Source: Octopus sinensis
Taxonomy: Eukaryota
Direction: 5' to 3'
Assembly (NCBI RefSeq): GCF_006345805.1
Contig: NW_021829216.1
Location: forward strand, 1-6,740
Length of the DNA stretch: 6,740 nucleotides
The position numbers were made by a program, and so were the translations under genes. Positions within the stretch are counted from its first letter, which is position 1. The number at the start of each line of letters is the position of its first letter. Below are positions 40-6,075 of the stretch, one piece after another. Under the pieces are notes generated by a model. It saw nothing but the letters and a program-made list of their open reading frames with translations. It searched no databases and had not been told where the DNA came from.

Positions 40-444
40 TACTTACTTGTACTTGTACTTGTACTTGTGACGGCGTTCACTCAGGGCGGGTTGAGCCGGC
101 TTCTTCTCTGGTCCTGACGGCGTCACGAACCATGGATTCATACAAGAAGTTTCGTGGGAATATTGAATTCACAAGCGGTCCCCGATATCCCGCATGCATA
201 TCCCGAGGGACGGGACGTCCTATTTGCCGTGGAGTTTCCACAAACGCAGGGACAGAACGACCTCGAAGCCGCCGGTTGCCGAACAGACGCCTCTTGGAAT
301 TTTCACCAGGCTTTGGCCCTAATATCGCTCGGTGCCAGACCAATCTGCCTTGGGAGTTTCTGAAGTTTCTGACGACATAGCTCTGACACTGCTCGTTAAC
401 ACCACCCTACCGCTTTGAGTAGGGGTTGGACTTTAGGTTGGACC
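40..444 (-). mobile_element. 405-bp RTE-clade LINE-derived insertion (5'-truncated or internally deleted, non-autonomous) with 10-bp TSD
   Basis: The exact direct repeat TATCATACTT lies at 30-39 and 445-454. The minus strand ends in a (CAAGTA)4 tail. Just before the tail, one frame reads SMVRDAVRTREEAGSTRPE*, which resembles RTE ORF C-termini as I recall them (..VRDxV....AGSTRPG*). No RT or endonuclease motifs are present. Confidence 0.8.
44..67 (-). repeat. (CAAGTA)4 tandem 3' tail of the RTE-derived element
   Basis: The plus strand has TACTTG at 44-49, 50-55, 56-61 and 62-67. Short tandem-repeat tails are typical of RTE-clade elements. Confidence 0.9.
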
Positions 445-1260: not shown

Positions 1261-1372
1261 AGTTTTCGAAAGCTTGTCCGTACAATCGCCATATTTGCAT
1301 TTATCTTTCTATCTTGTTAGGAATGCGCATTTCCCATTGTAAGTGTGAATATATATGTATATGAATAAATAT

Positions 1373-1639
1373 GGAGGTGCAATGGCCTAGTGGTTAGGGC
1401 AGCGAACTCGCAGTCGTAGGATCGCGGTTTCGATTCCCAGACCGGGCGTTGTGTGTGTGTATTGAGCGAAAACACCTTAAAGCTCCACGAGGCTCCGGCA
1501 GGGGGTGGTGGTGATCCCTGCTGTACTCTTTCACCACAACTTTCTCTCACTCTTTCTTCTGTAGGCCTGCTCGCGAAGCGCATTGTGACCAGCGATGTGT
1601 AACAACATCTGATGGCCTGGTCGGTCACGGAAGTCACGG
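1373..1639 (+). mobile_element. tRNA-derived SINE, family A, copy 1, with 12-bp TSD
   Basis: Starts GGAGGTGCAATGGCCTAGTGG, has A and B boxes, and ends in a GTCACGG-repeat tail. TSD ATGAATAAATAT lies at 1361-1372 and 1640-1651. A homologous inverted copy lies at 2146-2455. It resembles tRNA-derived SINEs of octopus; no family name is assigned. Confidence 0.93.
1383..1437 (+). promoter_or_regulatory. Internal Pol III type 2 promoter (A box and B box) of SINE A copy 1
   Basis: A box TGGCCTAGTGG at 1383-1393 matches TRGCNNAGYGG. B box GTTTCGATTCC at 1427-1437 is a GTTCGANNC-like variant. Confidence 0.8.
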
Positions 1640-2812: not shown

Positions 2813-2844
2813 TTCATATATATATATATATATATACATATATA

Positions 2845-3074
2845 ATCTTTTACTTGTTTCAGTCATTTGACTGCGGCCATGCTGGAGCACTGCCTTTATT
2901 CGCGCAAATCGAACCCAGCACTTATTCTTTGTAGGCCTAGTACTTATTCTATCCGTCTCTTTTGCCGAACCGCTAAATTAATGTGACGTAAACACACCAT
3001 TATCGGTTATCAAGCGATGTTGGGGAGACAAACACAGACACACAAAGACACACACACACACAGACATACACACG

Positions 3075-3106
<32 letters not shown>

Positions 3107-3282
3107 CATATATATATACAACGGGCTTCTTTCAGTTTCCGTCTACCAAGTTCACCCACAAGGCTTTGGTCGGCTGGAGGCTATAGTAGAAGACACTTGC
3201 CCATGGTACCACGCAGTGGGACTGAACCCGGAACCATGTGGTTGGGAAACAAGCTACTTACCACACAGCCTCTCCTCCGCCT
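2845..3282 (-). mobile_element. tRNA-derived SINE, family B, near full length, with internal (CA)n/(TA)n microsatellite
   Basis: Minus-strand head AGGCGGAGGAGAGGCTGTGTGG with a degenerate A box at 3271-3261 and B box GGTTCAGTCCC at 3228-3218. CCATGGGCAAGT follows, resembling the start of the CORE domain. Internal microsatellite at about 3028-3120; 3' end GAAACAAGTAAAAGA. A homologous copy lies at 3988-4320. Confidence 0.9.
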
Positions 3283-3595
3283 ATGAATATTTCATTTCAA
3301 TCCATGTACACAGTACCCGTTGTATTTTAAAAGCCAACTACGTAAAATTAATGTCCAGGAAGTAGAGTAGCTGCTTAAAAACATTTAATTTAATTTTGCC
3401 TTTATTGTTTAGTATTCTTCTAATTTTAGAACATTGCAAACTTTGAGCATTTTTTGCAAAATGGCTGAATTTTTTCTCCAGCCCAAAACTTTTCTAAAAT
3501 ACCAAGTTTGGAATGTAGCGAAATTTTAATCGGAAGTACGTAAAAAAATTTAATACAAGTTTCCTTACGGGATCCGGAACTATATTTCCATAGGG

Positions 3596-3740: not shown

Positions 3741-3910
3741 TAGTGCACATTTAAACACATAAGAGCTAGCCTTAATAGGAGTACCTGCACGCTAGAGGAG
3801 CAGATAAATTCCGAACAAGTATTAGAGATAAAATATCGGAATTTAACTGTTATCTCTAGTGTGCATGTAGTCCAATGATGGCTAGCTCTTATGTGTTTAA
3901 CTGTACACAG
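3741..3910. mobile_element. 170-bp foldback MITE, probably Tc1/mariner-derived (TA flanks, consensus CAGTG terminus)
   Basis: Perfect 21-bp inverted repeat at 3751-3771/3880-3900 and perfect 10-bp inverted repeat at 3805-3814/3836-3845, with imperfect pairing along the rest of the arms and a 21-nt loop (3815-3835). TA lies at 3739-3740 and 3911-3912. The termini TAGTG and (reverse complement) CTGTG are each one change from CAGTG. Confidence 0.75.
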
Positions 3911-3987: not shown

Positions 3988-4320
3988 CCGACCATAGCAT
4001 TGTGAGTGGATTTGATAAACGAAAACTGAAAGAATCCCATCGTGTACATATATATATGTGTGTGTGTAGTTGTGTGTGAGTGTGTGTGTGTATGTTTGCA
4101 TGGCAATGTTAGCCCCTACTCCAACCTCACTTGACAACCTGGTTTCTTTACAATGGTGGTTTCTTTACATACCGTAGCTTAGCGGTTCTGAAGAAGACAC
4201 TAATAGAATAAGTACTACGCTTACAAAGAATAATTCCTGGGGTCGATTTGCTCGACAAAAGGCGGTGCTCCAGCATTGCCGCAGTCAAATGATGGAAACA
4301 AGTAAAGGAATAAACGAATA
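3988..4320 (+). mobile_element. SINE family B, 5'-truncated and more diverged copy
   Basis: Begins at CCGACC..TTGTGAGTGGATTTG with no tRNA head. Internal (TA)/(TG) tract at about 4046-4095. Positions 4179-4309 match the reverse complement of 2846-2976 with about 19 mismatches in 131 nt (~85%). Confidence 0.88.
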
Positions 4321-4437
4321 TGCATGTATATATGTTTGTATGTATGTGCATGTATGTGTGCCAATATACATACATATATATATATATGCGTGTGTGTGTT
4401 GTGTGTGTATGTGTGTATGTGCGTGTGTATGTGTGAG
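4321..4437. repeat. (TATG)n/(TA)n/(TG)n compound microsatellite
   Basis: Direct inspection. Confidence 0.9.
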
Positions 4438-5106: not shown

Positions 5107-5266
5107 ATACAAAAATAAATATAGAGGAGTGGTCACTATGTGGCTCACTCTAGCACTAGTAAATCCAAAAGGTTTCAACCAACATGTATTTTGTGGTTGA
5201 AACCTTTGGATTACTAGTGCTAGAGTGAGCCACATAGTGACCACTCTCTTATATTTATTTTTATAT
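5107..5266. repeat. Long near-perfect inverted repeat (hairpin of about 70 bp)
   Basis: 5127-5162 pairs perfectly with 5211-5246 (36 bp). Pairing continues inward to 5184/5192 with single-A bulges at 5163, 5170 and 5182, and outward through 5111-5123/5250-5262. Confidence 0.95.
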
Positions 5267-5479: not shown

Positions 5480-5973
5480 GTGAAATAGAAAGATGAATAA
5501 TCTTGTAGTAGATTAATCAAAAGTTTAACCGATACCTTAGTAGAAAAATCACAGCAGTAACAGCACGGTTGGAGGTACAACCATCGGCGTTTGCAACCGT
5601 GCGTTGGTGCGGATAATTGAAATTAAAACATTATTGGTGAATTGAAGAAATGGAGCGAACGCAGATTGAACAGAAATCGTTTTATTCATTCTACACGTGT
5701 TTCGAAAGGCACAAATTCCCCAAATCCGATTGAATAATGGGACCATATTGTGTCTTTCTCTTCAGGAAGAAAAAAGGAAATCGTTTGGAAAAAACAAGAC
5801 CCGTTGAATTCTTCAAGCACCGGTTCTCAACTACACTGATAAACAGTTTCGCCATGGGCCTCTTAGGAGCACAGTTCGATTTGTTTTTTGTTCCGCCTCT
5901 GTTCTGTTTTTGTTTTTTTCCAACGGATTACCTTTGGAGGCGTTCAGCTCCATTCTTCAATTCACAATAATGT
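5480..5973 (-). mobile_element. Hammerhead-bearing non-coding island in (TA)n; probable Penelope-like element pseudo-LTR or retrozyme-like remnant
   Basis: A 494-bp unique island with (TA)n on both sides. It contains an intact type I hammerhead and an inverted copy of internal sequence at its minus-strand 5' end. Hammerheads in pLTRs, inverted 5' segments and AT-repeat targets are known Penelope-like element traits. No RT or GIY-YIG ORF is present, so the class is inferred. Confidence 0.55.
5680..5775 (-). ncRNA. Type I hammerhead ribozyme
   Basis: Minus strand: CUGAAGA at 5765-5759. Stem II GAAAGACACAA (5758-5748) pairs with UUGUGCCUUUC (5714-5704), 10 of 11 pairs, closed by G-C. GAAA at 5703-5700. 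Stem III is the palindrome ACACGUGU (5700-5693). Cleavage triplet GUA at 5694-5692. Stem I UUUUUUCUUC (5775-5766) pairs with GAA(U)GAA(U)AAAA (5691-5680), 10 bp with two bulges. Confidence 0.88.
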
Positions 5974-6075
5974 ATATTATATTATGATATATATATATAT
6001 GTATATATATATGCATATGTGTATATATGTATACGTATATATATATATATATACTGTCTTCCCTCCTATATATAT

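What the first reader, a model, noticed from the sequence alone, without database searches (positions are those of the whole stretch)
5680..5775. Intact type I hammerhead ribozyme with palindromic stem III and extended stem II
Seen: every core position is canonical (C3 U4 G5 A6 A7 G8 A9, G10.1-C11.1, G12 A13 A14 A15.1, U16.1, A17), with a predicted cut after GUA between 5692 and 5691 on the minus strand. Stem III is the 8-nt palindrome ACACGUGU, leaving only a 2-nt loop in a monomer. Stem II has 10 of 11 pairs plus a distal CCCA/UGGG helix. Established: Penelope-like element pLTRs and metazoan retrozymes carry type I hammerheads with short palindromic stem III that cleave best as dimers, typically with a very short stem II. 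Inference: this solitary copy with a long stem II may need a second RNA in trans, or may use the stem II extension for tertiary contact with stem I. If it lies in a host intron it could cut pre-mRNA. I cannot tell whether this family is already catalogued.
Basis: partly seen in the sequence, partly recalled or inferred. Interest (0 to 1): 0.85.

Follow-up and report, generated by a model that had tools for sequence, protein, structure and literature searches.

The report
Solo hammerhead ribozyme motif in octopus repeat
The window, from an octopus-like genome, holds one complete hammerhead self-cleaving RNA motif that looks like a 94-base mobile-element insertion; it is an ordinary kind of animal repeat-borne ribozyme, and whether it cuts is untested.

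Summary
All core positions are canonical and the predicted cut is between 5692 and 5691.

Chance is unlikely for this window: comparable motifs arise about 5e-4 times per window in random sequence. It is not excluded genome-wide. Rfam's type I model gives only 15.4 bits against a threshold of 34.

The context is the new result. The hammerhead fills a 94-bp unit (5683-5776) bracketed by a perfect 10-bp direct repeat. That unit interrupts one arm of an inverted repeat whose other arm lacks it. This reads as an insertion with a target-site duplication. The host DNA is octopus-like repeat DNA, with repeats matching Octopus vulgaris.

My best reading is a solitary retroposed copy of a Penelope-like or retrozyme-type hammerhead, probably a dead-end relic. 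No second copy, tandem repeat or reverse transcriptase/endonuclease ORF was found. No animal genome could be searched beyond 46 kb, so family conservation and covariation are untested.

The "2-nt loop" is better read as 2 bp plus a tetraloop.

Verdict: new member of a known kind, of modest interest.

The parts
5680..5775 (-). Whole type I hammerhead motif, from the stem I 5' strand to the stem I 3' strand
   Evidence: Sequence reading. Only descriptor hit in the window. Rfam RF00163 match at 5771-5682, 15.4 bits.
5766..5775 (-). Stem I, 5' strand: UUUUUUCUUC
   Evidence: Constrained fold pairs it with 5691-5680, with U5688 and U5684 bulged. Only the first 3 pairs (C-G, U-A, U-A) are contiguous with the core. 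Their pair probability is about 0.13.
5759..5765 (-). Core C3 U4 G5 A6 A7 G8 A9 (CUGAAGA)
   Evidence: Sequence reading.
5704..5758 (-). Stem II domain. G10.1-C11.1 closes an 11-position helix (10 pairs, A5753 x C5709 mismatch), then an internal loop, CCCA/UGGG (5741-5738/5722-5719) and an apical hairpin.
   Evidence: Pair probabilities 0.91-0.999 for the basal helix and about 0.53 for the distal helix. Present in every predicted fold.
5701..5703 (-). Core G12 A13 A14
   Evidence: Sequence reading.
5693..5700 (-). Stem III, palindrome ACACGUGU (A15.1 to U16.1). As a monomer it is 2 bp plus an ACGU tetraloop. Between two copies it forms an 8-bp helix.
   Evidence: Sequence reading. Monomer pair probability is about 0.02. 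The predicted dimer uses the 8-bp intermolecular helix, -11.9 kcal/mol relative to two monomers.
5691..5692 (-). Predicted cleavage site: after A17 (5692), before G1.1 (5691)
   Evidence: Follows from the hammerhead numbering applied to the sequence. Not tested.
5680..5691 (-). Stem I, 3' strand: GAAUGAAUAAAA
5683..5776 (.). 94-bp unit that consists of the hammerhead alone; the presumed insertion
   Evidence: Bracketed by the 10-bp direct repeat. It coincides with the extra segment in the left arm of the inverted repeat.
5673..5682 (.). Direct repeat copy 1, GAAATCGTTT (+ strand); presumed target-site duplication
5777..5786 (.). Direct repeat copy 2, GAAATCGTTT (+ strand)
5628..5662 (.). Outer left arm of the host inverted repeat
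   Evidence: 91.7% over 36 columns with 5973-5940, E 2.6e-5.
5940..5973 (.). Outer right arm of the host inverted repeat
5910..5932 (.). Inner right arm. It pairs with 5672-5682 plus 5787-5797 only when the 104 nt between them are removed; this is the within-element 'empty site'.
   Evidence: Alignment score rises from 26 to 33.5 on removing the repeat-defined segment. The best deletions of 103-110 nt all span 5679-5759, that is the hammerhead core and helices II and III. The repeat finder pair I3.
5481..5583 (.). 103-bp unit next to (TA)n, shared with Octopus vulgaris chromosome OX597820.1. A neighbouring repeat, not shown to belong to the hammerhead unit.
   Evidence: 92.5-94.7% identity to L028:4817-4971; the homology ends at 5583.

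Best explanation
This is a genuine hammerhead-lineage sequence: a solitary, type I hammerhead of the kind carried by animal Penelope-like elements and non-LTR retrozymes. It sits in an octopus (Octopus vulgaris or a close relative) repeat-rich region.

Shown:
- A complete canonical core and three helices.
- The motif exactly fills a 94-bp unit flanked by a perfect 10-bp direct repeat.
- That unit interrupts one arm of an inverted repeat whose other arm is uninterrupted.

Inferred:
- The unit arrived by (retro)transposition with a 10-bp target-site duplication, copied from a parent element. In such parents the hammerhead processes multimeric or tandem transcripts, probably by pairing two copies through the palindromic helix III.
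- This copy is alone, so it cannot release a unit-length RNA and is most likely a dead-end relic.
- If the minus strand is transcribed, it could cut after A5692. That would be slow as a monomer, because helix III is weak and no canonical loop-loop contact is recognisable. It would be faster if two transcripts dimerise.
For: - Core and helices read directly from the sequence; only one such site in the window.
- Random-sequence expectation is about 5e-4 per window for weaker criteria, and about 7e-5 with the 8-nt palindromic helix III.
- The 27 occurrences of the same core plus helix III string in the viral and metagenome collections lack helices I and II.
- Several features catalysis does not require match animal type I hammerheads. 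These are the G10.1-C11.1 pair and a small palindromic helix III, which is also the <<<<>>>> consensus of Rfam RF00163. Others are a large helix II and a short helix I, as in Penelope-type motifs (PMC4209133).
- A hammerhead-compatible fold lies within 1.8 kcal/mol of the minimum free energy fold (-20.2 against -22.0).
- The 10-bp direct repeat sits exactly at both ends of the motif.
- The inverted-repeat arms align through only if 103-110 nt covering the motif are removed.
- The host is octopus-like. Cephalopods are reported to carry Rfam type I hammerhead hits, 235 in the giant squid (PMC6962438).
- Animal retrozymes have target-site duplications longer than 4 bp and occur as solo monomers (PMC7229834; preprint 10.64898/2026.07.22.740005).
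Against: - The Rfam score of 15.4 bits is far below the gathering score of 34. By my scaling, it would be matched by chance roughly a thousand times in a genome of a few Gb.
- No second copy of the 94-bp unit or of its host was found in the window or in 46 kb of O. vulgaris DNA. Family membership, conservation and covariation are therefore untested.
- No tandem repeat, and no Pfam RT or GIY-YIG match among the ten ORFs tested.
- Stem I is A/U-rich and of low complexity, and partly uses bases of the direct repeat.
- Helix III has a predicted pair probability of 0.02.
- The unit does not fold better than shuffles (z -0.45 and -1.3).
- A 10-mer direct repeat within 150 nt occurs somewhere in 8.6% of shuffles of the island. 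Only its position is telling.
- At 94 bp the unit is smaller than any described retrozyme monomer (about 170-400 nt).
- The unpaired base between A9 and G10.1 that is typical of Penelope minimal hammerheads is absent.
Confidence: 0.6

Rival explanations
1. Chance look-alike. An ordinary hairpin in A/T-rich repeat DNA happens to be flanked by CUGAAGA and GAAA and a short palindrome. It has never acted as a ribozyme and has no hammerhead ancestry.
For: - Rfam score below threshold, and not reported in the whole-window scan.
- The core plus helix III string alone recurs by chance in large collections.
- The window is full of hairpins and inverted repeats.
- The fold energy is not better than shuffles.
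- By simulation, motifs with stem II >=5, a palindromic 8-mer and stem I >=3 occur about 1 per 200 Mb. A scan of a whole genome of a few Gb could therefore meet some.
- No relatives were found.
Against: - The per-window expectation is 5e-4 or less.
- The further 5 pairs of stem II and the longer stem I lower it by about two more orders of magnitude (my calculation from base-pair frequencies).
- The motif's edges coincide with a 10-bp direct repeat and with the gap between the inverted-repeat arms. A chance motif has no reason to do that.
- Features that catalysis does not demand match animal hammerheads.
Confidence: 0.2
2. A hammerhead-only mobile unit. The complete element is the 94-nt hammerhead itself, a miniature retrozyme. 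In tandem master copies it would cut itself into about 94-nt RNAs that are circularised and copied back into DNA.
For: - The direct repeats bracket nothing but the hammerhead, from the stem I 5' strand to the stem I 3' strand.
- The unit folds as a closed three-helix structure, both linear and circular.
- Retrozymes are non-coding, A/T-rich and have target-site duplications longer than 4 bp.
Against: - Only one copy was seen, with no tandem array.
- The ends of the unit are not at the cleavage site and show no terminal redundancy.
- Described monomers are 170-400 nt.
- A 5'-truncated copy of a larger element that carries its hammerhead near the 3' end explains the same facts (PMC8557442).
Confidence: 0.12
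3. A host-domesticated ribozyme that cuts a host transcript, for example inside an intron.
For: The core is fully intact, while the helices carry one mismatch and two bulges.
Against: - No exon, gene or Pfam match in the window.
- The surroundings are microsatellites and repeats.
- Helix III is weak and no loop-loop contact is recognisable.
- A preprint reports retrozymes depleted from introns.
- No orthologue could be examined.
Confidence: 0.04

Closest known systems
Hammerheads of Penelope-like element pseudo-LTRs (minimal variants and the D. virilis-like variants; Cervera and de la Pena 2014, PMC4209133)
   Same: - Type I topology.
- G10.1-C11.1 pair.
- Helix II larger than in canonical motifs.
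- Short, poorly defined helix I.
- Small palindromic helix III that allows a two-copy (dimeric) active form.
- Dispersed, highly variable copies in invertebrate genomes.
   Different: - Helix II here is 11 positions plus a branched extension (55 nt in all), against 6-8 bp.
- No unpaired base between A9 and G10.1.
- No flanking RT/GIY-YIG ORF or second pseudo-LTR in the window.
- Family conservation not shown.
Canonical type I hammerheads of animal non-LTR retrozymes and satellite DNA (newt, Schistosoma, coral, mussel; PMC7229834; Rfam RF00163)
   Same: - Identical core.
- Helix III of 2 bp plus a palindromic tetraloop, described as typical of invertebrate motifs.
- Low G+C context.
- Target-site duplication longer than 4 bp.
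- Solo monomers are known.
   Different: - No tandem repeat.
- The unit is 94 bp, not 170-400 bp.
- Helix I 6 bp / helix II 4 bp with conserved loop-loop contacts is not present.
- The Rfam score is 15.4 against the 34-bit threshold.
Hammerhead-bearing SINE-like elements of Schistosoma (Sm-alpha / Sj-alpha)
   Same: A short, non-coding, dispersed retroposed unit that carries a type I hammerhead.
   Different: Those elements are a few hundred bp long and have an internal polymerase III promoter. No tRNA-like or promoter segment lies inside the 94-bp unit (one search found no tRNA in the window).

Membership tests
Hammerhead ribozyme class | Conserved core: C3 U4 G5 A6 N7 G8 A9, G12 A13 A14, A15.1-U16.1, H17 | tested here: met
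   All positions read from the minus strand at 5765-5759, 5703-5700 and 5693-5692.
Hammerhead ribozyme class | Three helices around the core | tested here: met
   - Helix II is robust (probability above 0.9).
- Helix I has 3 contiguous pairs, or 10 with two bulges.
- Helix III has 2 bp plus a tetraloop, or 8 bp in a dimer.
- Helices I and III are weak in the thermodynamic model.
Hammerhead ribozyme class | Site-specific self-cleavage | not testable with these tools
   Needs in vitro transcription or end mapping.
Rfam RF00163 Hammerhead_1 | Score at or above the curated gathering score (34 bits) | tested here: not met
   15.4 bits, E 0.44 on 181 nt; absent from the whole-window list. The 51-nt insertion in helix II and the weak helix I cost score.
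Canonical animal type I hammerhead (retrozyme type) | Helix I about 6 bp and helix II about 4 bp with interacting loops 1 and 2 | tested here: not met
   Helix II has 11 positions plus an extension, and no loop motifs are recognisable. Criterion from PMC4209133.
Canonical animal type I hammerhead (retrozyme type) | Helix III of 1-2 bp with a small palindromic loop | tested here: met
   A-U and C-G pairs plus ACGU. Criterion.
Non-LTR retrozyme | Tandem repeats of 150-450 bp, each with a hammerhead | tested here: not met
   One copy only; no direct repeat of the unit in the island or the window. Solo monomers are described, but this unit is only 94 bp.
Non-LTR retrozyme | Target-site duplication longer than 4 bp, when present | tested here: met
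   Perfect 10-bp direct repeat at 5673-5682 and 5777-5786.
Penelope-like element hammerhead | Located in a pseudo-LTR next to an RT plus GIY-YIG ORF | tested here: not met
   No Pfam match in ten window ORFs. The window is microsatellites and short repeats. A 5'-truncated solo fragment would also lack the ORF, so this does not exclude descent from such an element.
Penelope-like element hammerhead | Large helix II, short helix I, palindromic positions 15.2-16.2 / loop 3 | tested here: met
   Searches set against PMC4209133.
Penelope-like element hammerhead | Unpaired nucleotide between A9 and 10.1 | tested here: not met
   A9 (5759) is followed directly by G10.1 (5758), which pairs with C5704.
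Any hammerhead family | Many related copies with a conserved core and compensatory changes in the helices | not testable with these tools
   No animal genome collection is searchable by DNA. Only 46 kb of O. vulgaris could be fetched, and it holds no copy.

The most novel reading that the evidence does not exclude
The 94-bp unit is a complete mobile element consisting of nothing but a hammerhead with a long branched helix II. That would make it the smallest retrozyme-like element, giving roughly 94-nt self-cleaved and possibly circular RNAs in cephalopods.
Probability: 0.12. Interest if true: 0.65.

Novelty: new member of a known kind. Interest (0 to 1): 0.3.

Why it matters
Type I hammerheads are already known in thousands of copies in animal repeats, including Rfam hits in a squid genome. 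One more copy changes little.

Two points have some value:
- This motif falls well below the Rfam threshold although its core is perfect. Octopus genomes may therefore hold a hammerhead variant with a long helix II that standard annotation misses.
- The unit bounded by direct repeats contains only the ribozyme. If that holds across copies, it would bear on how small a ribozyme-bearing mobile unit can be, and on how retrozymes relate to Penelope-like elements.

Tried and rejected
**Searches for relatives that found nothing**
- Exact look-ups of two window ORFs across the island found no record.
- A protein-word search with the 77-aa island ORF found nothing.
- The inverted-repeat arm sequence was absent from viral contigs.
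- The core plus helix III pattern gave 1 viral and 26 metagenome hits, all without helices I and II. They served only as a chance control.

**Octopus DNA**
- SINE-derived ORFs gave only O. vulgaris "hypothetical predicted proteins".
- Through them 46 kb of O. vulgaris DNA was fetched. It holds no homologue of 5584-5985 and no Rfam hammerhead.

**Ideas tested and dropped**
- That 5481-5583 plus (TA)n is the 3' end of the hammerhead's element. Only one other copy was seen, it stops at 5583, and the hammerhead has its own direct repeats. I therefore treat 5481-5583 as a separate neighbouring repeat.
- That the inverted repeat is a head-to-head pair of truncated Penelope-like copies. Only one arm carries the motif.
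- tRNA-like or polymerase III features: none.

**Tool and library limits**
- Lunse et al. 2017 on dimeric Penelope hammerheads is not in the paper library.

Full report
**Observation**

On the minus strand, 5775-5680 reads UUUUUUCUUC-CUGAAGA-[G AAAGACACAA ... UUGUGCCUUU C]-GAA-ACACGUGU-A^GAAUGAAUAAAA. Every position of the hammerhead core is canonical:
- C3 to A9 at 5765-5759.
- G10.1 (5758) paired with C11.1 (5704).
- G12 to A14 at 5703-5701.
- A15.1 at 5700, U16.1 at 5693, A17 at 5692.
- Predicted cut between 5692 and 5691.

Helix II has 10 of 11 pairs, with an A5753 x C5709 mismatch, and continues into CCCA/UGGG and an apical hairpin. My descriptor scan of both strands found no other such site in the window.

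A 2-nt loop cannot close, so as a monomer helix III is 2 bp plus the palindromic tetraloop ACGU. Stem I can also be longer than implied: 10 pairs with two bulged U when the junction is enforced.

**Is it more than chance?**

I scanned 200 Mb of random sequence with the island's base composition.
- The bare core with a 2-bp helix II turns up about 1.9 times per window-equivalent.
- Motifs with helix II >=5 bp, helix III >=4 bp and helix I >=3 bp turned up 8 times, about 5e-4 per window.
- Only 1 had an 8-nt palindromic helix III.

The five further pairs of helix II and the longer helix I reduce this by roughly two more orders of magnitude. That factor is my calculation from pairing frequencies, not a tool result.

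As an empirical control, CTGANGAG-N35-65-CGAAACACGTGTH occurs once in the viral contigs and 26 times in the metagenome contigs. None combines a helix II >=5 bp with a helix I >=3 bp.

On the other side, Rfam's Hammerhead_1 model gives 15.4 bits against a gathering score of 34. The match appears only when 181 nt are searched alone (E 0.44) and not in the whole-window scan. That score alone would be reached by chance many times in a genome of a few Gb. The unit also folds no better than shuffles (z -0.45; -1.3). A hammerhead-compatible fold is close to the optimum, though (-20.2 against -22.0 kcal/mol), and helix II is very stable.

**Where the window comes from**

The window is non-coding, A/T-rich and full of microsatellites and short repeats.
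- A SINE-derived ORF matches a "hypothetical predicted protein" of Octopus vulgaris.
- Several window repeats match a 20-kb O. vulgaris chromosome segment at 77-87% identity.
- The stretch 5425-5580 matches that segment at 92.5%.

The host is therefore O. vulgaris or a close relative. Cephalopods are already reported to carry Rfam type I hammerhead hits, 235 in the giant squid (PMC6962438).

**Context of the motif (the new result)**

The island 5481-5973 lies between (TA)n tracts. It contains an inverted repeat with outer arms 5628-5662 and 5940-5973, 33 of 36 positions matching, E 2.6e-5.

The arms continue inward, 5672-5682 plus 5787-5797 against 5910-5932, only if about 104 nt are removed from the left arm.
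- The alignment score rises from 26 to 33.5 for that deletion.
- Over all deletions tried, the best ones are 103-110 nt long and all span 5679-5759, the hammerhead core with helices II and III.

The extra segment is bracketed by a perfect 10-bp direct repeat, GAAATCGTTT, at 5673-5682 and 5777-5786. The 94 bp between the copies (5683-5776) run exactly from the 5' strand of stem I to the 3' strand of stem I.

A 10-mer direct repeat within 150 nt occurs somewhere in 8.6% of shuffles of the island, so the repeat alone is weak evidence. Its placement at both ends of the motif, and at the gap between the arms, is what counts.

The simplest reading is that the hammerhead arrived as a 94-bp insertion with a 10-bp target-site duplication in one arm of a pre-existing MITE-like palindrome. 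The other arm then serves as an internal empty site. A chance motif has no reason to coincide with an insertion unit, so this raises my confidence that the sequence descends from a real hammerhead-bearing element.

**What it most resembles**

PMC4209133 describes two animal architectures.
- Canonical animal type I hammerheads have helix I about 6 bp and helix II about 4 bp, with loop-loop contacts. Helix III is 1-2 bp with a 2-4 nt palindromic loop, which favours dimeric action.
- Penelope-like element hammerheads have a larger helix II (6-8 bp), a short helix I, a conserved G10.1-C11.1 pair and palindromic 15.2-16.2 positions. They usually have an unpaired base after A9, and their activity in vitro is low even as dimers.

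PMC7229834 adds three points. A helix III of 2 bp plus a tetraloop is typical of invertebrate retrozyme hammerheads. Retrozyme monomers are about 170-400 nt and sit in tandem. When target-site duplications are present they exceed 4 bp.

The present motif shares the core, the G-C pair, the palindromic helix III, a large helix II and a modest helix I. It lacks the extra base after A9 and the canonical loops. Its helix II domain (55 nt) is much longer than either type.

**What is missing**

- No second copy, no tandem repeat, and no Pfam RT or GIY-YIG match among the ten ORFs tested in the window.
- No relative could be retrieved. ORF look-ups and a protein-word search found nothing.
- The only octopus DNA reachable, 46 kb, has no homologue of 5584-5985 and no Rfam hammerhead.
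- Conservation and covariation, the usual proof of a structured RNA family, are therefore untested. So is catalysis.

**Mechanism, with shown and inferred steps marked**

- Shown: the motif, its helices, the flanking direct repeat and the interrupted inverted repeat.
- Inferred: the unit was copied, probably through RNA, from a Penelope-like or retrozyme-type parent and inserted with a 10-bp duplication.
- Inferred: in the parent the hammerhead trims multimeric or tandem transcripts. Two copies probably pair through ACACGUGU; the predicted dimer uses that 8-bp helix, -11.9 kcal/mol relative to two monomers.
- Inferred: a lone copy cannot release a unit-length RNA, so this copy is most likely an inert relic. 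If its minus strand is transcribed it might cut slowly after A5692.

I put about 0.8 on hammerhead ancestry as opposed to chance. I put about 0.6 on the full statement including the insertion, and about 0.2 on significant activity in vivo.

**Rivals**

- A chance look-alike (0.2).
- A hammerhead-only miniature retrozyme (0.12). This is the most novel reading that the evidence does not exclude.
- A domesticated host ribozyme (0.04).

**Verdict**

This is a new member of a known kind, with an unusual long helix II and an interesting insertion signature. It is of modest interest until copies in octopus genomes are compared.

Noticed in passing
window 5131-5242 (extends to about 5110-5265): A near-perfect palindrome of about 110-150 bp that scores 72.9 and 72.3 bits on both strands against the plant miRNA family MIR2863 (gathering 94). 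It looks like a MITE-like foldback, not a miRNA gene.
   Followed up: no
window 3746-3907: A second element with terminal inverted repeats (TTTAAACACATAAGAGCTAGCC ... GGCTAGCTCTTATGTGTTTAA). It gives a sub-threshold MIR7993 match of 42.8 bits.
   Followed up: no
window 1372-1579 and 2250-2456: Two copies of a SINE-like repeat in inverted orientation (90-92% complementary, about 670-865 nt apart). An ORF across one copy matches an O. vulgaris 'hypothetical predicted protein' (P0001). ARAGORN finds no tRNA in them.
   Followed up: partly
window 2822-3290 and 3988-4333: A second repeat family, also as an inverted pair. It has at least six copies within 20 kb of O. vulgaris chromosome OX597820.1 (L028), some annotated there as small 'hypothetical' genes (P0002, P0003).
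   Followed up: partly
window 5481-5583; L028:4868-4971: A 103-bp unit directly following (TA)n is 92.5-94.7% identical (including part of the flanking (TA)n) to a copy in O. vulgaris, which also follows (TA)n. Homology stops abruptly at 5583, where the O. vulgaris copy runs into (GTAT)n. It may be the end of an unclassified repeat that targets or carries TA microsatellites.
   Followed up: partly
L030:17997-18040 (+), with its inverted partner at L030:17694-17769: O. vulgaris holds a minimal hammerhead-like motif (CUGAUGA-A-GGCUGG...CAGCC-GAAA-UGU-U). It has the extra base after A9 typical of Penelope-type motifs and a 5-bp stem I. It lies in one arm of a roughly 360-bp foldback. The other arm (89.5% identical) has CAAA instead of GAAA, so the motif is not kept there.
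   Followed up: partly
window 77-420: A G+C-richer stretch (about 0.48) with overlapping ORFs of 69-88 aa on both strands and no Pfam match. Its nature is unknown.
   Followed up: partly
window 5727-5731 against 5674-5678 and 5778-5782 (minus strand): The apical loop of the helix II extension contains AAUCG, complementary to the CGAUU within both copies of the direct repeat just outside stem I. A 5-bp pseudoknot is conceivable, but a match of this size is expected by chance.
   Followed up: no
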